Shown here: one piece after another, positions 27,564 through 43,050 of the stretch
Layout: each line of letters opens with the position of its first letter
Numbering within the stretch: the first letter of the stretch is position 1
Source of the DNA: Selaginella moellendorffii
Lineage: Eukaryota; Plantae; Lycopodiophyta
Reading direction: 5' to 3'
Length of the DNA: 64,000 nt
NCBI RefSeq assembly: GCF_000143415.4
Contig: NW_003314262.1
Location: forward strand, 1,601,960 to 1,665,959
Made by a program: the position numbers and the translations under genes
Notes under the pieces: generated by a model
Seen by the model: only the letters and a program-made list of their open reading frames with translations
Told to the model about the DNA's origin: nothing
Database searches by the model: none

Positions 27564-30187
27564 CTAGGGCCTGCAAGCCGTCATGACAATCCCCTCGTCC
27601 TTCCCAAACCCCGCCACCACCTTCTTCAATATAAACTCCGTCGTCTGGTGCGCATTCTCCACCGCCTTGGACACCCGGATCCACCTCTCCCCGTGCTTGG
27701 GCTCCGCCGCCTTGCACCTCTCCACCACCTCCTGGAGCTGCGCCTCGCTCCCGTGCTGCTGCTCAAACTTGTACAGCAGCGCCCAGAAATCCCCCACGTC
27801 CGGAGCAAACGTCACCGCCCTGTTCATCCAGTTCCTCGCCTTCTCCACCTTCCTGTCCTGCCAGAAAAACTTCCCCACCGCCGCGATCACGTATGGATCC
27901 TGCTCGCTGTTCTTGATCGCGTCGAAGCTCTTGGTCTTCCTCTGCGCCCGCGGCACCATCTCCACATTCGCGGCCCACAGCAGCCCGCTCTGCCGGCACT
28001 CCTGGAGCGCCTTCGCCATGAGCGCGTCCGCCTCCTTCCAGTTCCCGGCCCTCGTCTCCGCCCGGATCGCCGCCAGCCACAGCTCCGGGTTCTCCCTGTT
28101 CTTGAGCCTCGCCGTCGTCAGCATCGCTCTTGCCCTGCTGATCCCCCCGACTTTCTCTTCCAGCTGCGCAGCCGAGAGCCACAGCGGAGTACTAGCCGGG
28201 CATTTCTCCAGCGCTCTCTCGTACACGCTCCTCGCCGCCTCAAAGTTNNNNNNNNNNNNNNNNNNNNNNNNNNNNNNNNNNNNNNNNNNNNNNNNNNNNN
28301 NNNNNNNNNNNNNNNNNNNNNNNNNNNNNNNNNNNNNNNNNNNNNNNNNNNNNNNNNGTCGAGCGATTCTCTCGTTCCGTGGCTCTTTTCAAGCTGCGCC
28401 GCCTTCACCCAGATGCTCTTCTTCCCGGGAAACGCAGCCAGAGCATGAGCGTAGATAGCTCTCGCCGTCTCGATCGAGCCCCGCTTCCGGCACTCGTCCG
28501 CGTCCGCCACCCACGTCCGCTTCTTGTCCTCCTCCTCCACACCGATCCCGATGGTGCTCCTCACGATCGCCACGCACGTCGCCGCCGACCCGGCCCTCTC
28601 CGCCGCCTCCGCCTCCTTCATCCAAAACTCGCGGTCGATCACCACCCCGACCCGCTGGAGAGATCGTATCGCGCGGTCGATGATGCCTTCCACGCGCGAA
28701 ACGTTCCCCTGTGCCTCCTCCAGCTTCGCCGCAGCGATCCAGATTGTTGGCTCCGTTGGCAGCGCCTCGCGAGCTCGGTTGAGCACCACCCTCGCCTTGT
28801 CGTAAGTTTCCAGCCGCGCAAGCGCTAGCCAGAGCTCGACGTGGAGACGGCAGCACTCGGTAGCGCGAGCCAGTAAGATCCTCGCTTCGTCCTCGTTCGC
28901 CAGCTCCACCACCGCCTTCCACAGCCGGACCGAGTCGGGTATAAACTCGAGTCCCTTGCGAAGAACACGGCTCTTGGCGGCGTTTTCCACCTCGAGCCGC
29001 GCAGCCGCCATCCACAGCTTCACGGACGTCGGGATGGACTTCACCGCCATGGCGATCACTTTTTTGGCCGCATCGCCGCTGGCCAGCCGGCAGGCCTCGA
29101 GCCAGACGTCCTCGTTCTTGGGACACTCCTCGCATCCCTTCTGGATGAAACTCCTCGCAGCAGCGATCTTCCCCGCCACCTCTTCCAGCCGCGCGGCCGC
29201 GATCCACCCGGGAGCATGCTTTGGATTGGTCTGGATCACCGACTTGAGCAGCAACCTCGCCTTCTTGATATCGGAGATCTCGGCGTCGCTCGTGATCTTC
29301 ATACTCTTGAGATCGGTGAGGTATCCTTTCGGATCCACCACCGTGAGCCCACTCACCGAGTCGGACAGCCGATCCAGCTTGAGCGACAGAACAGTCCCCC
29401 GCCCCTCCCCGACCGCGGTAAGATCCGTCACCGGCGTCTGCGACCACGGTGTCTCCGCGCCGCCGGCAGTAGCAGCGCCGCCAACTCCAGCGGCGGCGCG
29501 GCTGCGAGGATCCAGCGCAGTGACGTGCTCCTTCTCCTGCCGAGCCTTTTCCAGCAGCGTGTCCGGCGCGGGCACAAAGCTCTCAAACCGCCTCTTCTTG
29601 TTCCTGGAAGAGTAGTCGCCAACCTCGGGGATGTTTTCCCACTCCTCCGCCGGAAGATCCAGCAGCGTCCTCTTCACGTCCGCGAACTGCTCCGTGATCT
29701 TGGGATTGGAAGCTCGGTACTGCTCGATCACCAGCTTGAGCCGCGCCTCCCGCCGGTCCTTGCGCCGCGAATCCATCCTCTTGTCCACGCTCTCCCATAT
29801 CTGGTCGGGCTCCTTGTCGTCCTCGTCATACTCACCCGTCGCGAAGAGCCCCACATCGTTGCCCTCGAATTCATCGAATTTCTGGTTCTCATCGTAGCCC
29901 TTGTCGTCGGCATCGTCGTCGTCGTCTACCGCCGCCGCTGCCGCCGCTCCTCCGCCAAGAGGTGGCGCCTTGCCTCTGCCGCGCCCGACGCCGCCGCCCG
30001 GCCCTGGAGCGCCGCCAATGGCGGTGGCCGACCTGTCGGGGAGATCCGGCGCTGCCCTGGCGGGGCCGATGTCGGATCGAGTGGTGAATCCGGTGGCGCC
30101 GCGCCCCAATCCGGCCACATAGTTGGGCGGCGGCTTGGCGTTGAGGAAATCCAAGCGGCCGCTCCTCGGCTGCACTGGGGCTTGCAT
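27564..30187 (-). CDS. STA1: Pre-mRNA splicing factor PRP6 / STABILIZED1 (HAT-repeat U5 snRNP protein); apparently intronless, spans N-gap 28248-28357
   Basis: Conserved N-terminus LDFLNAKPPPNYVAGLGRGATGFTTRSDIGPAR, DPKGYLTDL, DIKKARLLLKSV, HAT repeats and C-terminal EPKHGERW. An alternative in-frame ATG lies at 30238. Confidence 0.96.
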
Positions 30188-31346
30188 TTCTTCCCCTGTC
30201 AAGAACCCTAAGATAGAGTGCCCTAAATTTTCTAGCATTTAAAACCTCTACATTCTTCTGTTTTGAGAATATTCTTAGAATATTAGTAATTGTTGGAAAA
30301 TCTCATGCTTTGGCCGCAATGCACTGTTTTTCTTTCAATCACTAGGATTCAGTGTCACATAGAATTTAGCTTGTGTAGATTCATGTTGTCAGTTTTTGTG
30401 GAACACGTTGATCAAAATCAGACAATCCACTTCTTATTTAATTATTTTTGTTACGCTTGTTTGTTTCATCTATAGATCTTCTATTACCTTTTCTGTATAA
30501 TCTTCATGTTCTTGTTCTTTTAGCGGCTGGAAGGATTTCATGCTGCCCTGCCCCATGAAGTTAGAGCCTGTGTGATCTTGTCCATGGCATGAGAGCAATG
30601 ACCTCGAGAGCTTTTTGAGCTTGTGCATAAGCAACAAGCATAAGTTTCACGAGACTATATCCTCACCATGGAATTTGGTGTTTTCCTGGGGCTAGGAAAC
30701 CAATCACATGTGAAAACAGTTTAAAATTTAAAATTCTTTAACTGACACTTCTAAGTTCTTTTTGTGAGTTGAGGACGAGAGGATGACATGAAACTCTAGG
30801 TGCTTTCATTTGAATGAAAATCCTTTCCTTTTCATGAACAAGAAGAGGGATCTCGCTCGAGATATAGTCTTTCTTCCCTGCACTGCACAAGCTAGGAAAG
30901 GTGGTAGCTTGAAACTCATCAGCAAAGTCTAGTCACTGTTCAAGTACTTCACCAACGGGATTGTGACAATCCTGAGGCTCATTCATGCATTGCAGGAGAG
31001 GACGCACTGAGTGTCATGGAAACAACACAAAAATCTCAAGGTGAATGTGATGAAAGTGTCTACTGTATAATGAAGGTGGTGTTGAAATTTTTTTCACAGG
31101 TATAGTCTCTTATAGTCTCTTTTGTGGCTTGTCTGTGTCACAAATCATGAGAAAGCATCATGTAAGATTGTGGATTGTACTTTCATAAGATCTGCAGGAG
31201 TAAAGTTGGAAGCAGCTTGATTGTTTTTTTTTGGCACCAAATTAAATTTAATTTGGGAATTCTAAAGTTTATTTTTTAAAGGTTAGAACTCTCTTTAAAT
31301 TATAGATTAACAAATAAAAATGATATATAAACTATAACACTAATAC

Positions 31347-33241: not shown

Positions 33242-34259
33242 TTACACCTTGGAGCCCAGCACAAGACCAGCAATTCCAAGGGCGAGAGCAACGCTTCCTC
33301 CATACTTCGTTCCAAACTCAGCAATGTTGGTGAAGGAATCGATGGCAGCATAGCCCTTTGCATAAATTTCCTTGCCCACGATGTTGTAGATGGCGCGAAC
33401 TGGAGCAAGCACGGCCTGGTATGCGTATGGCAGGTACTCGGTTGCACCGACAGCATCAAAGATGGAGTCTAAGAACCACTCGCTGTGAGTGGATGCTAGA
33501 ACATTGTTCACCATGATACTGCCAGAGAGAGTGAGTGGGTTGTAGAGGCCTAGCTTCTCAACCTTTGAGATTTCTGGAGAAGTAGCGCAGAATTGTTAGA
33601 AACATCCCACCAATATATATGCTTTTTGCTTTCCTTACCAGTGATTTTAGATGATTCCCACAGGGAATCTCCAACCTTGAGGTCCTCGGCTCTCTTGTAC
33701 ACGAGCTTCCCATTGACAGCAATGGGAACAAAGTGGCCTGCAGTGAGTTCCAACATGTTTGAAGCGCTATGCACTTGGAAAAACTTGGAGATGACATCAG
33801 CATCCTTGTGGCCGAATGCATACACATCTGAATAGATATTCTTGCCTACTGCAACCTGTGGAAAAGTTATACTTGGACAAGATTTGTAAATTTATGTGAA
33901 AGTATTCAACCTTGTCTCCGACATTAAGCTCCCTTACGAACTTAATTTCTCCATTATACATCTGAACAGTTGCATCTCCTATAATAGCTTGAAAATTGTA
34001 AGACAAAAAGTGAATTCACATGAACCCTACCTGGGAAGCATCCTGCCTTTGGAAGGGGTGGAGGGGGTCGAGTGCCTGGAGGAGGAGTTGCTGGAGTGGG
34101 AGGGGGAGTGCCTGGAGGGGGTGCAGTGCCTGGAGGAGTGGCTGGAGCGGGAGGGGAGGCAGGGGGTGGAGTGGGAGGGGCTGAAGTTTGTGCCACTGCA
34201 ATGCTTGCAGCAAAGGCAATGAAAGAAGTCAGGAAGATTAGAGCATTGGTATAAGCCAT
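33242..34259 (-). CDS. Secreted Pro-rich protein fused to a Hedgehog-type Hint (Hog) autoprocessing domain, 281 aa, 4 exons
   Basis: Exons 34259-34031, 33978-33911, 33855-33639 and 33573-33242; GT-AG introns with consistent phases and an open frame. Signal peptide, Pro-rich stretch, AG/CFPGDATV, ELNVGDKV, LELTAGHFV, AEDLKVGD, GLYNPLTLSGSIMVNNVLAS, then an amphipathic/hydrophobic tail. Confidence 0.9.
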
Positions 34260-36479: not shown

Positions 36480-38370
36480 CACTATTAATTTTGGAACGCT
36501 TCATCATTTCTTTACCTTTCCTGGATAATAGGAATGCTGGTATGGACAAGCATTGAAAGCAAGAGAAACTCTGTAGCCAAGTGGAGCAAACTAGATGCTC
36601 CCAAGCCCTCTTAACACTCGCCCTTTCAAACTGCAGCAAGAGCTTCCTTGGAAGCTTCATTGCATGGATTCCAGTTGCAAAGCTTGGATTGCACCCTCTA
36701 AGGCCTGGCAGCCACTGATCCAAGCTTGCAGCTTCATTCAAATCATCAGCTTCCCTAGAACCATAGTTGCAGCTAGACATGCAAACGTTCAAATGCGTCC
36801 ATGTTTAAATGCCGTTTAAAACGTTTTTTTCAGGACAATCAAACGTTTACATGTTAAAGCCTAAAATGATTAAGAAAACACTAATATTTACTAAAGACAC
36901 TTTAATCTGATATTAAGTTTATAAAACCCATACTAAAACAAATGAAAGAAAAAGCCATTTCGCTGTTCTGCTTGTCCCAGCACTGGACCAGCTCTCTGTG
37001 CTTGCCACCATAGATTCTGCTGCCCCCCTGAACCCTGTGCAGCTTGCTGCAGCAGATGCCCATCATCGGCATCTGCTGGGTCTGCTAGCTCAAAATCGGA
37101 AAAACTGCTGCGAGGTTTTTTAAGAACTTCATAAGGGATCTCCCTCATTGCCTTGCATGTTTTCACACCTCTTGCCTGAACTCCAGCAAGATGTGCTCGC
37201 ACTCGCTCCGCTCCCCCAGTGTGAATCTCATGACAATACTTACATGTCCAGTGCCGCTCTGCTCGTATCACATGCTTCCAGCTCCAGCATTCGTGGCATC
37301 CTCCAATTCCTGCCATGACTACATGAACCCTGAAGAAACCCTAAAGAAACCCTAAAGAAACCTTTGTCTCTTTTCGCAAATAGTGCAAACGCGTTGGGAG
37401 TTTAGAACGGCATTTTTTAACGCGTTTAAAACGTTATGTTTTTTTAGTTTCATACGTTTTCCGGCAACTATGCCTAGAACCATGCCATGAGCAAGCTGGC
37501 TGATCTGTAATCTGGTCCAGGCTAGCTCCACAACCATATTTATTTCATGCATGGATCGCCACTCACCAGTTGCCAATGATTCAACACGGCCTCCAGGAAG
37601 AAAATGCCCTCAGAAAACTCTAGGAGTTTATTCTGCACCCGAGGTTCCGTCTGTAAGTTTTGTACTTGTTGATGGTTTTTGTTTTTGTAAATTGATCGTG
37701 TAGCTCATGTCGGTTTTGAGACTCCCATAAGACTCCGGTCAGCTGACAATGCTAAGTGAACTTTCATATTATTGATTCTTGCAATGCCTGCTCAGAGCTT
37801 CACAACTACGGCACAGGAAATGTGCAGTAAATGGCGGTAAATGTGCTCCATTGTTATAGATCCCTGGCGATGCCACTGCAATAAAATCAGGTGGAAGCTC
37901 GCCGTTATCATGGAAAGCCAATTCTGGATTGTGAGACAAAGGAGAGAAGTCATCCTCATAATGGTACAGTGAAAAGTTATCTTCTTACGCTCTTTTTGTT
38001 TTTGGTGCATACCTGTGTTGAGAATTCCCAGGCTTGGCGCCATCAAGACTACAGTGGCAATGGCAAGAGCAACAAAGCTTTTAGAAGCCATCATGGAGGA
38101 AATACAAATGGGAGATGGAACTAAACGAGTGCATACACATTGTGTATTTATACTCGACCAAGTAACACTACTCTTACTCTACAGTGAGAATTTTCTTGCC
38201 AATACAGACTTTGGGAAAGAGTAGTGACGTGATCGCATTTCTTCTCTTGAAGCCATGAACTCCCACTTTGCCATGCAAGGTCACTACGTACCACGCAATT
38301 AAAGCTTGATAAAGACTTCAAAGAGTGTATTGGAAAGAAAGATAGAATCGAGAACAAGATAGCAAGATGT
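36480..38370 (-). pseudogene. Possible F-box gene relic disrupted by the hAT insertion
   Basis: ILSFFPIHSLKSLSSFNCVVRS..W (~38270-38350) loosely resembles an F-box motif. Coding-like fragments continue either side of the hAT TSD; frameshifted. Confidence 0.3.
36762..37472 (-). mobile_element. Internally deleted hAT transposon retaining a BED zinc finger ORF (36933-37316)
   Basis: TIRs CATAGTTGC...GCAACTATG; perfect 8-bp TSD CCTAGAAC; BED finger WKHV...WTCKYCHEIHTGGAERVRAHL...C. Confidence 0.92.
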
Positions 38371-38599
38371 TTTATTCATCAATCCTCTTGATAGATCCTT
38401 TTATTAAGAGATTCTAGTTGACGCTGATAACTCCAACAGCTAGATATGCAAATCGGTTTAAAGGAATATTTATGAATATTCCTAATTTTTAATTTAATTA
38501 TTATAGATTGGTAATAATCAAATTAATCTTAAAAGTATATAATAAAATTGCTGTGTATTGCAATGCAGCAATGCTAGGTTTGCTTTTGTTTTTAAATAC

Positions 38600-40560
38600 T
38601 TTTTATTATGATATATAATTTATTATGATCTGTTCAGTATGCACTACTCCTGCTTTTGTATATACTATATCTTTTATCCATATAAGATCTATTAGTTTTT
38701 TATTATTTGTATGTATCCTTCTTTCTCTATTATTGTTTGAAGTGGTTTTGCTTCTTCTTTTTGATAATCAATATTGAAATCTCCTATAATTATTACTGGT
38801 TTTTTATTATCTATTTTCTGTATATATTGTTGTAGTTGTTTTATGAATATTTGTATATTTTTCCAGGTTTTCTATGTTAATTTATTATCTGTAATTTTTT
38901 TTCTAGTGATATATACGACATTGCCATTGTTTCTGTTTTTAAATGTTCTATTTTTTCTGATTTATAACCATTTGTATGCAATATTGTTTATGTATATATG
39001 ATTTATATTTATTAAAATATAAATCCTCATGTTTTTGTGTTCTTACTTCTTGCATACATATTATACCTGATGTTAATAATTGTGAATCACTCTTTATATC
39101 TTCTTGATGTGCAGTAATAAGCAATAAGCAATAATAGATGTTGTGTTTAGAACTTGTATAATTGGTAAATTTATCAAATCAATTTGCCATGGTGCTTCTG
39201 TTGTCATTCTGATTATTTCTTTAGCTGCATCTTTATTGATTATAATATGTTTATATTCAATTGGTCTGTATAAATGTATACCTTTTAGTGTTTATGCTCT
39301 TGATAATGTTGTATATACTTGTCCTGGATATTTTGTTTTATATGAGTCATATCCTAATTGCATAACTGTTGGTCTTTGTGCTCTATGTATTGTTCTTCCT
39401 GTGCATGGCTGTACTCGGAAATAGGTTTTACTTATAACATAATTTTAATTTTCAGTAATATTTGTAATCCTTGTTTTTTTCATTGGTGTCCAGTTTTGTT
39501 TTTCATTATTTTGCTTTATTATTATGTTTTCTTTAGCTCTTGTTTTTTTTACCTATTTTTATATTTGGGAATTCTATCCATATTATTTGTTCTTCTTCAA
39601 TCTGAGTTACATCTTGTAATACTCCATCTGCTCTATTTACTAATCTATCTTCTATTGCTATAGATTATTGTTGATAGTTGCTATAGATTATTTTATATAG
39701 TTCTTGTGTTTTTCTTATGTCATTTGGTAATAAGACAAGAATTTCCATGTTTGTCTTGTACTTCTATAATTATATTTTTATCTTGTATGTGTTGTATTAT
39801 TTTTTTCATTATGTTCTCTTACTTATTTGTTAGCTGCAAATATAGATTAATATTCTGTGTTATATGTATTTTTGTGGTGGCTTACATTGTTGGTGGTAGT
39901 GGTGTCAAGGCTGCGTTGTTAGTGTAATTGGAAAATCTGGCCATGATTCCGAGAGCAGGCCACAACTCTAAGATTGTGTGAGTAATTGGCAATTGTGGAG
40001 ATTATGCATTACATTTTCCAAAACTTGGCATCTACTATATATTGGATAGTTCACACTCATTCCAACTTGATGAAAATTTTGTCATTTCTTTTGTTGAAAG
40101 AAGATTTTGTGCTTTGCACTGTGATTCCACAAGTTTGTCTTAGAATGACTGTTTGCTTGCTGTGATCAATGTTTTCCATCATTCCTTGTGAAGGTACTAA
40201 AGATTTTATTGTTGAAAGCTTTCTCTTATATTTATCTAATGTGTCATTTGTTAATATTATTTGACATTGTTTTGATGCTTTTAATCGAAATGCAAAAATT
40301 GAATGTTTTGTTGAACCATTTATATTATAAGTTGCTTTTCCTCTAGGTGCTGCTATTAATACTGTTTGTCCTAGTTGATTATTGATATCTTGGTTTTTTT
40401 TATAATATCATTTGAGTGTTTCTATAAATGTATTTAAAAGCATTGATTTTTCAGTTCCTGCTCCTCCTGTTAAAAAATAAGCACAACTGTTTGTTAAGTT
40501 ATTTATTTATTTTAATATGAAGTCATCATGTATGATTCTTTTCTTTTTATTTATATTTCT
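38600..40560 (-). mobile_element. Helentron (Helitron-like) remnant: PIF1 helicase followed by AP-type endonuclease
   Basis: Helicase: FLTGGAGTEKS, LIAAPRGKATYNINGSTKHS, TIHRAQ, GQVYTTLSRA*TLKG. Endonuclease: HQEDIKSD..IICMQE, PVIIIGDFNID, LIDLIW, Y*TDH. Interrupted by unrelated-looking sequence at ~39880-40195. Confidence 0.8.
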
Positions 40561-41980
40561 TATTAATTAGTGATATTTACTATTTTCCATAAGATAATCA
40601 TCTTGTATTGTAATATTTTGTATTTATTAATATTTTATATTTTACACTATTTATATTATAATGTTTATATTTATATATTTTATATTTTAAACACCACACT
40701 TGTCTCCAACTTACTGCAAATGCCCTTTATGACTGTATTGCGGAATGAGCAGGGGCCATGAGAAGGGATGGAAAAGAATCAAGGAACTCCCCTTCAATTT
40801 TGGAAATTCATCATCCTGTTGCTTGTCACCAAAATGTTCTTGTGCCCCCAAACCAAAACCTCTCACACTGTTAAAGAAGTCCAGGATGAGGCTTGTTTCA
40901 AATGCCCACAAACATCCATAGTCCCAAGGGAGTCCCTTCTCACTCACCAGCTTATGTGCGAGTTCTGGCAAGTTACTGAAGAGGTGCACCTGTCATGAAG
41001 ACGCTAAGAAACTGAAGTTGGAAGATGTATTGTTTGCTTCACCTCCAGGTCTTCCTTTTTGTGTTATAGCTTGGCCTATGGAGGCTTTACTTTGGTCGTG
41101 GCCATTGCAGAAAAACTACTGGGTTAGCATATCATTTTTTAGACTCGTGAAAAACATACATTGTATGTGTTATTTTAAATCTCATCTCTCAATCCATCCC
41201 TTCTACACAGCTCCAAACATGGTAAATCTTGTCTCGAAGGTTTCTTCGCATTTAATCGTGGATATGTTTCACAGGCTCGCTCTATTATCAAGCAAAAAAC
41301 TAGAAGAGGGAAGTAGAAGAGTCATCTCTAGAAAAGCTCGCGTCGAGGCAAATGCGATAGAACCGAGCAAATTTGCCCCTATGTGGCATGAGTNNNNNNN
41401 NNNNNNNNNNNNNNNNNNNNNNNNNNNNNNNNNNNNNNNNNNNNNNNNNNNNNNNNNNNNNNNNNNNNNNNNNNNNNNNNNNNNNNNNNNNNNNNNNNNN
41501 NNNNNNNNNNNNNNNNNNNNNNNNNNNNNNNNNNNNNNNNNNNNNNNNNNNNNNNNNNNNNNNNNNNNNNNNNNNNNNNNNNNNNNNNNNNNNNNNNNNN
41601 NNNNNNNNNNNNNNNNNNNNNNNNNNNNNNNNNNNNNNNNNNNNNNNNNNNNNNNNNNNNNNNNNNNNNNNNNNNNNNNNNACGCAACGCTGGGAGTAGT
41701 GCTAGAGTGATACAATTTGTTGCTAAGACGGCCTGCAATTTGTAGTGAGGATCCACCTGTGACGATTACTTTAGTATCTACCAAAAGCATTGAAAGCAAC
41801 ACAAAGGTAAAACAAAGGGCCGAGTAGTCTAGGCAAAAACTCATCTTTAATCTTTTTCCAGGGACAAAGAAATCTATTTGCGTCTTAAATTATGTAGATA
41901 ATTTTTTTTGTATACAAAACCTAAACAAAATCAAATTAAAATCTGGACCATAGGAAAAGCATATAACATTCTTGGAAGGA

Positions 41981-43050
41981 ATGGATAGCAACCGGCTTTC
42001 AATGGTATGGAGGACTCCACAGCCGTCAAGCTGCTATCCTCGAATTCGAAACGCACATTGTGCTCGGTTCTTGTCAATTCGAGCTCAATCTTCTGGCAGT
42101 GACGAAAGGCCCATCTGGCTACCTGGCTTATCTCCACCCCAACATCTTGATGGCTCGTAAGTCCAACCATTTCTTATCTTTGCTTTCTCGGCCGTGTGAC
42201 TCCTTTGTGGCAAATTTGCTATCGATCGACCATCCAGTCTCGCAGGCGACTTTGGATTTGATCCCCTCGAGCTCGGTAAAGACCCCGAAACCCTTCGATG
42301 GTACGTGCAAGCGGAACTCGTCCATTCTCGTTTTGCTATGGCTGGCATTGCTGGAATCCTCGTCACAGATGTAAGTCACTCTCTTCTATCAACTATAGAA
42401 ACGATACCTTGGCTCTTTTGAAGCTTTTAAGGACTGTGGGAGGCAGAGACCTGCCTGTCTGGTACGAGGCCGGTGCCACAGAATTCGAGTTCGCAGACAC
42501 GCGGACTTTGTTTGTAGTCCAGCTGATTCTAATGGGGTGGGAGAAATCTTATGAGCCCTTTGACAGAGATGTAAAACTTCCACTTGTGTTACCTTGCAGG
42601 TATGCTGAAACGAGGAGATACTACGATTATATCAGTCCTGGTTCGCAAGCGGCTCAAGATACGTTTTTGGGGTTTGAGGATGCTCTTGCTGGACTACAAA
42701 GCGGGTATATTCCTGGCCAAAAGAAAACAAATATTGGATATGACTGAGGAAAGAAAAATGGATTTTTTTACCATATGCAGCTATCCCGGAGGTCCGTTTT
42801 TCGATCCCGCTGGCCTAGGAAGGGACATAAACAACGCACGAACGTTGAAAGAGAAGGAACTCAAAAACGGTAGTAAGGTTTGCTGTTCATACCGATCCTG
42901 ATGTGAGTTGCAGGAAGGCTGGCCATGGTAGCAATACTTGGTGTTTTTGTTCAAGCTTTCTTCACGAAAACAGGCCCCATAGACAACTTGCTGACGCACG
43001 TTTCTGATCCTTGGCATAACACGATTGTCCAAACCCTGTCGCACGGCTAG
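41981..43050 (+). CDS. LHCA5: Photosystem I light-harvesting chlorophyll a/b protein Lhca5 (6 exons)
   Basis: Transit peptide, then [80 protein letters not shown] and ELKNGRLAM. The [13 protein letters not shown] block fits Lhca5. Confidence 0.9.

What the first reader, a model, noticed from the sequence alone, without database searches (positions are those of the whole stretch)
33242..34259. Plant Hedgehog-type self-cleaving protein: AGP/extensin-like peptide fused to a Hint domain
Seen: an intact 4-exon, 281-aa gene. It encodes a signal peptide (~1-23), a 50-aa Pro/Ala/Thr-rich peptide starting with Gln (QTSAPPTPPPASPPAPATPPG...), and G73/C74 (AG-CFP) opening a Hint domain with TxxH (LTAGH). 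An amphipathic region and hydrophobic tail follow where the Hedgehog sterol-recognition region lies. Established: Hog domains cleave at Gly-Cys via a thioester and couple cholesterol to the N-fragment; Hog genes have been noted in non-animal eukaryotes, including seed-free plants, without a function known to me; classical AGPs are Gln-initiated PAST-rich peptides anchored by GPI. Inference: autoprocessing would release a hydroxyproline glycopeptide carrying a sterol or other adduct, a GPI-independent lipid anchor or wall-coupling system not known in flowering plants.
Basis: partly seen in the sequence, partly recalled or inferred. Interest (0 to 1): 0.85.

Follow-up and report, generated by a model that had tools for sequence, protein, structure and literature searches.

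The report
Spikemoss Hog gene with proline-rich cargo
This is a real, already annotated spikemoss gene that joins a short proline-rich peptide to a Hedgehog-type self-cleaving domain; the gene family has been published since 2008, so only the kind of cargo and its untested fate are new.

Summary
On the minus strand, 34259..33242, lies an intact 4-exon, 281-aa gene: signal peptide, a 50-aa cargo that is 50% Pro, Gly73|Cys74, a Hint module (Pfam PF01079, 91 bits; best fold matches Drosophila Hh-C 6TYY/1AT0), a conserved helical region and a hydrophobic tail.

The window is Selaginella moellendorffii GL377566.1. The product is exactly GenBank EFJ37173.1 (SELMODRAFT_403332). Plant Hog genes were published by Bürglin in 2008. 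The scan has flagged a sister locus on other DNA (s1-388112).

- The Pro-rich cargo marks a young clade of three loci, with dS 0.07-0.14 between them. The clade is nested among Selaginella Hog genes whose cargo is only 5-6 residues.
- The cargo is encoded by an unstable repeat of roughly 18-21 nt and differs in length between loci and haplotypes (29 to 70 aa).
- It has no Ser-Pro3-5, no Tyr and no alternating [AST]P modules, so "AGP/extensin-like" is a statement about composition only.
- Cys74, Thr137 and His140 are kept. The Hedgehog general-base Asp is an invariant His, and the Cys143 equivalent is Thr and varies across the family.
- The Hog part is under purifying selection (dN/dS 0.14-0.32).
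- Only intron 3 splicing is shown by reads.

Self-cleavage is likely. A sterol adduct and Hyp glycans remain inference.

The parts
33242..34259 (-). Whole gene from ATG to TAA: 4 exons, 281 aa. Identical to GenBank EFJ37173.1 (SELMODRAFT_403332).
34191..34259 (-). Signal peptide codons 1-23. The hydrophobic core is A6-A23, with A-V-A before Q24.
   Evidence: Hydropathy; AF2 helix 2-23; N-terminus conserved in paralogues. No signal-peptide predictor was available.
34041..34190 (-). Cargo codons 24-73: 50 aa, Pro 50%, PAST 84%, ending in Gly73.
34051..34175 (.). Imperfect coding tandem repeat that encodes most of the cargo. TRF reports periods of 9-54, and the PPGTxPP-type unit is about 18-21 nt.
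34038..34040 (-). Cys74 codon (TGC). It aligns with Hedgehog C1 (C258 of fly Hh) and is invariant in 51 family members.
33979..34030 (-). Intron 1 (52 nt, GT..AG), phase 1, splitting the codon of Gly77 in CFP|G. The same position is used in all paralogues.
33911..33978 (-). Exon 2, the first strands of the Hint module.
33856..33910 (-). Intron 2 (55 nt, GT..AG).
33639..33855 (-). Exon 3, the Hint core. His115 (33810..33808) sits at the place of Hedgehog D46. Thr137 (33744..33742) and His140 (33735..33733) form TxxH.
33574..33638 (-). Intron 3 (65 nt), confirmed by a spliced contig.
   Evidence: the joint from 33573 to 33639 skips 65 nt with CT..AC ends on the + strand
33482..33573 (-). Start of exon 4: the last Hint strands and motif J (A-S-T-H-S). 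Thr200 (33490..33488) sits at the place of Hedgehog C143.
33305..33481 (-). Residues 203-261: a conserved helical region in the place of the Hedgehog sterol-recognition region. W204, L206, D207, Y223, Q224, P229, R231 and G238 are invariant or nearly so.
33245..33304 (-). Residues 262-281: a hydrophobic, transmembrane-like tail (mean KD about 2.2 over 15 residues in the near-identical allele) followed by S-K-V.

Best explanation
The gene encodes a secretory-pathway precursor of the plant/algal non-Hedgehog Hog family. It belongs to a Selaginella-specific subfamily with very small cargos. The following steps are inferred. The signal peptide is removed after Ala23. The Hint module makes a thioester between Gly73 and Cys74, helped by Thr137 and His140. 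The thioester is then resolved by a hydroxyl nucleophile that His115 activates, in the place of the Hedgehog general-base Asp. This frees a 50-residue Pro/Thr-rich peptide. The Hog part stays in the membrane through its C-terminal hydrophobic helix. The conserved helices before that tail lie where Hedgehog recruits sterol, so a membrane lipid such as a phytosterol is the leading candidate for the nucleophile, with water as the alternative. In the secretory pathway the Pro runs of the cargo would probably be hydroxylated and carry short arabinosides. The following is shown: gene structure, homology, fold, conserved catalytic residues, purifying selection on the Hog part, the cargo's origin as an unstable coding repeat, and splicing of intron 3.
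For: The product is identical to an annotated S. moellendorffii protein. Pfam Hint scores 91 bits over residues 71-203. The family profile matches fly Hh-C at E 3e-33. The AF2 model has pLDDT 84.6, with the Hint part above 90, and its best Foldseek matches are 6TYY and 1AT0 at TM 0.79-0.80. In 51 family members C74, F75, H115, H140 and D207 are invariant, and position 137 is always T or S. The D46H mutant of Hedgehog remains active (PMC12054796; solved structure 6TYY). Hog dN/dS is 0.20-0.32 among the three Pro-rich loci and 0.14-0.16 against the 5-residue-cargo sister. A hydrophobic segment near the C-terminus occurs in 35 of 51 members, usually followed by K/R. A spliced contig crosses intron 3 and a few raw RNA reads lie on exon 4.
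Against: The Cys143 equivalent is Thr200, and the position varies in the family (A20, S10, T8, C7, V6). C143A and C143D block processing of animal Shh, so the animal mechanism cannot apply unchanged. Neither Pfam nor the family profile aligns beyond the Hint module with full-length Hedgehog chains, so homology of the tail to the sterol-recognition region is not shown. Sister genes release only 5-6 residues, which questions whether the cargo is the point of the protein. No reads covered exons 1-2, and RefSeq has a 5'-truncated model here. No biochemical work on any plant Hog was found.
Confidence: 0.65

Rival explanations
1. The Pro-rich stretch is a tolerated, slippage-driven expansion of a short linker or propeptide. 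The functional product is then the membrane-anchored Hog part itself, or the cleavage event, and not a glycopeptide.
For: The Pro-rich clade (support 98/97) is nested among genes whose cargo is TNTTG or TNTNNS. The cargo is an imperfect repeat of roughly 18-21 nt. Its length is 29, 48, 50 or 70 aa across loci, and 48 against 29 aa between the two haplotypes of one locus. Bürglin attributes a Thr-rich stretch in another Hog protein to polymerase slippage.
Against: All copies stay in frame, start with Q-T and keep P/T/A/G composition. However, the frame is enforced by selection on the downstream Hog part, so this is weak evidence. No test of selection on the cargo itself was possible because of the indels.
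Confidence: 0.25
2. The protein does not cleave. It is a type I membrane protein with a Pro-rich stalk reaching into the wall and an inactive Hint fold.
For: The Cys143 equivalent is missing and the general-base Asp is replaced. C143 mutants of Shh are dead.
Against: C74, T/S137, H140 and H115 are invariant across 51 members from lycophyte, moss, liverwort, fern and green alga. That is hard to explain without catalysis. Hog dN/dS is 0.14-0.32.
Confidence: 0.08
3. This haplotype's copy is not expressed as a full-length mRNA, either because transcription starts in exon 3 or because the copy is falling silent. The 281-aa protein would then not be made from it.
For: The RefSeq model at this locus starts at M133 (149 aa). 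Reads and contigs covered only exon 4 and the end of exon 3. Decayed relatives exist (P0163 and P0164).
Against: The ORF and all splice sites are intact. The allele differs at 3 of 1018 nt and keeps a full-length RefSeq entry. Coverage was only 2 reads per raw run from about 12% of each run, too thin to show absence.
Confidence: 0.1

Closest known systems
Plant non-Hh Hog proteins (pSm Hog, pSl Hog, pPp Hog; Bürglin 2008, PMC2362128)
   Same: Same family and species. pSm Hog, from ESTs DN839649 and DN837769, has the same signal peptide type, CFPGDATVQMYNG start, GH at the D46 place, AS-x-HSEWFLD, LPxAYQAVLAPxR and a hydrophobic tail. Its near-identical database relative P0154 is 77% identical to this Hog part. 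The paper already notes that the motif J Cys is replaced by S, T or D.
   Different: pSm Hog has only a few residues (TNTS) between signal peptide and Cys. Here 50 Pro-rich residues lie there. The Pro-rich cargo did not appear in the paper's text or held supplements.
Animal Hedgehog C-terminal autoprocessing domain (fly Hh-C 1AT0/6TYY; human SHH)
   Same: Hint fold, Gly-Cys junction, TxxH and the position of the module at the C-terminus of a secreted precursor.
   Different: There is no Hedge domain. The general base is His, not Asp. Thr replaces C143. No detectable similarity exists in the sterol-recognition region. There is a real hydrophobic C-terminal tail.
Choanoflagellate Hoglet and nematode XC Thog (Thr-rich cargo plus Hog)
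   Same: A low-complexity stretch that could be O-glycosylated lies in front of a Hog domain. It is thought to arise by slippage.
   Different: Those cargos are Thr-rich rather than Pro-rich and occur in other lineages, so the origin is independent. Not compared by sequence here.
Classical arabinogalactan proteins and AG peptides
   Same: A signal peptide followed by a PAST-rich, disordered stretch (general definition in PMC8471777).
   Different: There is no GPI signal after the PAST stretch and there are no alternating [AST]P modules. Pro occurs mostly in runs of 2-4.
C. elegans warthog proteins (source of the RefSeq names 'warthog protein 4/6')
   Same: They share only the Hog module.
   Different: The 50-aa cargo is low-complexity and leaves no room for a Wart domain. 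The name is an automatic transfer.

Membership tests
Hedgehog-type Hint/Hog domain | Pfam PF01079 above the gathering score | tested here: met
   91 bits against a cut-off of 29.7, residues 71-203, on the allele that differs at 2 residues. Colinear partial hits on exons 2-4 of the window.
Hedgehog-type Hint/Hog domain | Hint fold | tested here: met
   AF2 pLDDT above 90 over the Hint part. Foldseek best matches are 6TYY (E 1.9e-10, TM 0.79) and 1AT0 (TM 0.80), followed by BIL domains and inteins.
Hedgehog-type Hint/Hog domain | Nucleophilic Cys at the first residue, preceded by Gly | tested here: met
   G73|C74-F-P-G. C74 and F75 are invariant in 51 members, and the -1 residue is Gly in 25 of 51.
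Hedgehog-type Hint/Hog domain | TxxH motif | tested here: met
   T137 and H140. Position 137 is T or S in all 51 members and H140 is invariant.
Hedgehog-type Hint/Hog domain | General-base Asp (D46 of Hh-C, D303 of fly Hh) | tested here: not met
   The position holds His115, invariant in the family. The D46H mutant of Hedgehog is active, so function may be kept.
Hedgehog-type Hint/Hog domain | Cys143 (motif J), required for animal Hh processing | tested here: not met
   The position holds Thr200. The family has A, S, T, C or V there. C143A and C143D are inactive in Shh.
Hedgehog-type Hint/Hog domain | Sterol-recognition region after the Hint module | tested here: inconclusive
   Conserved helices lie in the right place. 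One weak phmmer stretch matches SHH 338-394 (13.9 bits, i-E 0.23). Pfam positions 163-213 and the family profile do not align there.
Hedgehog-type Hint/Hog domain | Self-cleavage with transfer of sterol to the N-fragment | not testable with these tools
   This needs biochemistry. No study of a plant Hog was found.
Classical AGP / AG peptide | Signal peptide plus a PAST-rich backbone | tested here: met
   PAST 84%, Pro 50%. Hydrophobic N-terminus.
Classical AGP / AG peptide | Clustered non-contiguous [AST]P glycomodules | tested here: not met
   There are 0 [AST]P[AST]P units. Pro runs are 2,3,2,1,2,3,3,1,3,4,1. The criterion is taken from my knowledge of the Hyp-contiguity rule.
Classical AGP / AG peptide | C-terminal GPI signal after the PAST region | tested here: not met
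   The PAST region is followed by the Hog module. The hydrophobic tail belongs to the Hog part.
Extensin | Ser-Pro3-5 repeats | tested here: not met
   There are 0 SPPP, one SPP and three TPPP.
Extensin | Tyr cross-linking motifs | tested here: not met
   The cargo has no Tyr.

The most novel reading that the evidence does not exclude
The Hog module esterifies the C-terminal Gly73 of a hydroxyproline-glycosylated peptide to a phytosterol or another membrane lipid. This would give seed-free plants a lipid anchor for wall glycopeptides that does not depend on GPI. The chemistry would use a His general base and would not need the Cys143 branched intermediate described for animal Hedgehog.
Probability: 0.15. 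Interest if true: 0.8.

Novelty: new member of a known kind. Interest (0 to 1): 0.4.

Why it matters
Non-animal Hog proteins are widespread, and a 2026 paper still describes their function as unknown (PMC13353863). This small gene, with its paralogues carrying cargos of 5 to 70 residues, is a compact natural series for three questions:
- Do plant Hog domains cleave?
- Which nucleophile do they use?
- Is processing possible without the Cys143 that is reported as indispensable in animals?

A sterol-linked hydroxyproline peptide would be a new kind of plant surface molecule. If the cargo turns out to be a neutral repeat, the gene is simply one more member of a published family.

Tried and rejected
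- Nematode origin. Short introns and the RefSeq 'warthog' names suggested it. It was rejected because the window matches S. moellendorffii GL377566.1 exactly.
- Extensin or classical AGP membership. Rejected on motifs.
- GPI anchor on the tail. This was considered, but there is no polar spacer between the small residues (G-G-S) and the hydrophobic stretch, and most relatives have K/R after that stretch. No predictor was available.
- First homologue search with a whole Pro-rich protein. It was swamped by Pro-rich words: 8000 candidates gave only 18 hits. It was repeated on residues 74-281 alone.
- Contig look-ups for two RefSeq-only models failed. They were replaced by GenBank models of the same loci.
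- Supplements of an AGP survey and of the Selaginella expression atlas held nothing on this gene; some of these files were cut when stored.
- Selection on the cargo itself could not be tested, because the indels prevent a codon alignment.
- The AF2 coordinates could not be read, so active-site distances were not measured.
- A second Hog gene in the window was looked for and not found.

Full report
**Observation**

The minus strand between 34259 and 33242 carries four exons: 34259..34031, 33978..33911, 33855..33639 and 33573..33242. The three introns are GT..AG and measure 52, 55 and 65 nt. They are AT-rich (29-38% GC), while the CDS has 51% GC. The 846-nt CDS gives 281 aa.

The protein reads as follows:
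- A hydrophobic N-terminus that ends A-V-A before Gln24.
- 50 residues with 25 Pro, 8 Thr, 7 Ala, 4 Gly and 2 Ser.
- Gly73|Cys74-Phe-Pro-Gly.
- L-T-A-G-H, with Thr137 and His140.
- G-L-Y-N-P-L-T-L-S-G and A-S-T-H-S.
- About 60 helical residues, then a hydrophobic tail ending S-K-V.

**Identity of the gene**

The window is Selaginella moellendorffii assembly GCA_000143415.2, scaffold GL377566.1, near 1.63 Mb. The spliced product is identical to EFJ37173.1 (SELMODRAFT_403332, UniRef D8QTU1).

The other haplotype (GL377581.1) carries the allele EFJ27773.1 / XP_002971175.1. It differs at 3 of 1018 nt (T58A, G278A and one silent change) and has the same PRP1-type neighbour downstream. RefSeq lists only a 149-aa model for this haplotype, starting at Met133.

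The neighbours in the window are ordinary genes: a PRP1/Prp6-type splicing factor, a Y-family DNA polymerase, a chlorophyll a/b-binding protein and a PUF/CCCH protein. The window holds no second Hog gene.

**Transcription**

A 333-nt contig from a public run joins 33573 to 33639, skipping exactly intron 3. Two of three raw RNA-seq runs gave two reads each, on exon 4 only. Twenty runs from eight studies hold 11-21% of the sampled words.

This shows a spliced transcript at low level. It does not show exons 1-2.

**Homology and fold**

- Single exons give colinear partial matches to Pfam Hint. The full-length allele gives 91 bits against a cut-off of 29.7, over residues 71-203.
- phmmer finds fly and human Hedgehog chains.
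- A profile of 51 relatives finds fly Hh-C at E 3e-33. The D46H mutant 6TYY scores best.
- An AlphaFold2 model built on that alignment has mean pLDDT 84.6, with the Hint part above 90. Helices span 207-280 with falling confidence in the tail.
- Foldseek ranks 6TYY and 1AT0 first (TM 0.79-0.80 on the target), then BIL domains and inteins.

**Active site**

The residues align as follows:

| This protein | Hedgehog Hh-C |
|---|---|
| Cys74 | C1 |
| His115 | D46 |
| Thr137 / His140 | TxxH |
| Thr200 | C143 |

In 51 family members C74, F75, H115, H140 and D207 are invariant, and position 137 is always T or S. Position 200 is A (20), S (10), T (8), C (7) or V (6). H201, S202 and W204 are nearly invariant.

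A 2025 paper reports that D46H Shh still processes. It also reports that C143A and C143D do not, and that C143 carries a branched thioester intermediate (PMC12054796). So the plant family keeps what is needed for the first step and has a workable general base. It cannot use the animal branched intermediate in the same form. Bürglin already noted the loss of this Cys in plant and red-algal Hog domains.

**The region after the Hint module**

Residues 203-261 are predicted helical and partly amphipathic, with hydrophobic moments of 0.35-0.61. They hold some of the best-conserved columns of the family: W204, L206, D207, Y223, Q224, P229, R231 and G238.

A hydrophobic segment near the C-terminus occurs in 35 of 51 members and is usually followed by Lys or Arg. 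That pattern fits a membrane anchor with a short cytosolic end.

Similarity to the Hedgehog sterol-recognition region is not established. There is one weak phmmer stretch against SHH (13.9 bits, i-E 0.23). Pfam positions 163-213 and the family profile both stop at the end of the Hint module, even against full-length Hedgehog chains.

**The cargo**

It is PAST-rich (84%). It has no Ser-Pro3-5, no Tyr, no Cys and no alternating [AST]P units. Pro occurs mostly in runs of 2-4, with three TPPP. By the usual motif criteria, which I recall from memory, it is neither an extensin nor a classical AGP. Contiguous Pro of this kind is expected to carry short arabinosides once hydroxylated. That expectation is inference.

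The DNA is an imperfect tandem repeat. TRF reports periods of 9-54, and the unit encodes roughly PPGTxPP.

**Paralogues**

Three loci in S. moellendorffii have this cargo type:

| Locus | Position | Cargo |
|---|---|---|
| A (this gene) and its allele | GL377566.1 near 1.63 Mb; allele on GL377581.1 near 2.31 Mb | 50 aa in both |
| B | About 0.6 Mb away on the same scaffold | 48 aa; 29 aa in its counterpart on the other haplotype, whose Hog part differs at only 2 residues |
| C | About 70 kb from the allele of A | 70 aa; a RefSeq isoform lacks 20 aa inside the repeat |

All CDSs rebuilt from the natural loci equal database proteins and share the same intron positions.

On a tree of Hog parts the Pro-rich genes form a clade (support 98/97). 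That clade lies inside a Selaginella-only clade (100/99). Its successive outgroups carry TNTTG, TNTNNS and a small four-Cys peptide.

Between the Pro-rich loci, Hog dS is 0.07-0.14 and dN/dS is 0.20-0.32. Against the TNTTG gene, dS is about 0.4 and dN/dS is 0.14-0.16.

No other Pro-rich cargo appeared among 150 representatives at 50% identity or among 34 closer relatives.

Named relatives come from a moss (Ceratodon), a liverwort (Marchantia paleacea), a fern (Adiantum) and a green alga (Gonium). No seed plant was among the named hits.

**Literature**

Bürglin 2008 reports Hog domains in S. moellendorffii, S. lepidophylla and Physcomitrella, and none in Arabidopsis and other higher plants. Its pSm Hog, given in a supplement, is a short-cargo member (TNTS before the Cys) of the same Selaginella clade. 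[quoted passage not shown] I found no paper on a Pro-rich or HRGP-like Hog cargo, and no biochemistry of a plant Hog.

**Earlier scan notes**

The scan has flagged Hog genes of this genome several times. One un-followed note (s1-388112, 1075 letters) has the length of locus C from ATG to stop.

**Reading**

Self-cleavage at Gly73|Cys74 is the best-supported function. The reasons are the strictly kept catalytic residues and the purifying selection on the Hog part.

Whether the freed peptide is the purpose of the protein is open. It is young, length-unstable and absent from the nearest relatives. This fits a tolerated linker expansion as well as it fits a fast-evolving glycomodule.

A lipid or sterol adduct rests only on the position and conservation of the helical region and the membrane tail.

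**Verdict**

This is a real gene, already annotated, in a published family. The new content is the cargo type, its repeat dynamics, and a clean statement of how the active site differs from animal Hedgehog.

Noticed in passing
window 33242-33756 (RefSeq XP_024534526.1, P0165): RefSeq models this haplotype's gene as a 149-aa protein starting at Met133. That drops the signal peptide, the cargo and the catalytic Cys. The GenBank model and the allele's RefSeq entry are full length.
   Followed up: partly
L004:5001-6014 and L005:5001-5956 (locus B on the two haplotype scaffolds): The Hog parts differ at 2 residues, but the Pro-rich cargo is 48 aa on one haplotype and 29 aa on the other, so the coding repeat is length-polymorphic. 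GenBank models at both copies mis-splice: EFJ37209.1 reads into intron 2, and EFJ27735.1 inserts A-I-I inside CFPGD.
   Followed up: partly
L006:6378-7452 (locus C, GL377581.1): This is a third Pro-rich Hog gene with a 70-aa cargo, about 70 kb from the allele of the window gene. RefSeq isoform X2 lacks 20 aa inside the repeat, which may reflect the other haplotype rather than splicing. GenBank model EFJ27964.1 adds a doubtful 146-aa N-terminal extension.
   Followed up: partly
P0021 (Logan contig of 982 bases, organism not named): This protein joins a hevein-type chitin-binding domain (PF00187) to a Hog domain of this family. It keeps Cys at the C143 place (A-S-C-H-S).
   Followed up: no
P0163, P0164 (SELMODRAFT_418602, SELMODRAFT_415625): These gene models contain scrambled pieces of this Hog subfamily, with a recognisable signal peptide and Hint fragments. 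They are probably decayed copies, which suggests birth-and-death turnover.
   Followed up: no
L003:11492-12186: A second Hog gene lies about 4.6 kb downstream of the TNTTG-cargo gene on GL377679.1, forming a tandem pair.
   Followed up: no
window 28118-30238 (-): This is a 706-aa uninterrupted ORF for a PRP1/Prp6-type splicing factor in a stretch of 61% GC. GenBank models it as 833 aa on this haplotype and 966 aa on the other.
   Followed up: no
window 38001-42000: The sequence upstream of the Hog gene is very AT-rich (29% GC) with a strong T-over-A skew (-0.24 at 38-40 kb). No long tandem repeat was found between 30.2 and 42 kb other than the cargo repeat.
   Followed up: no
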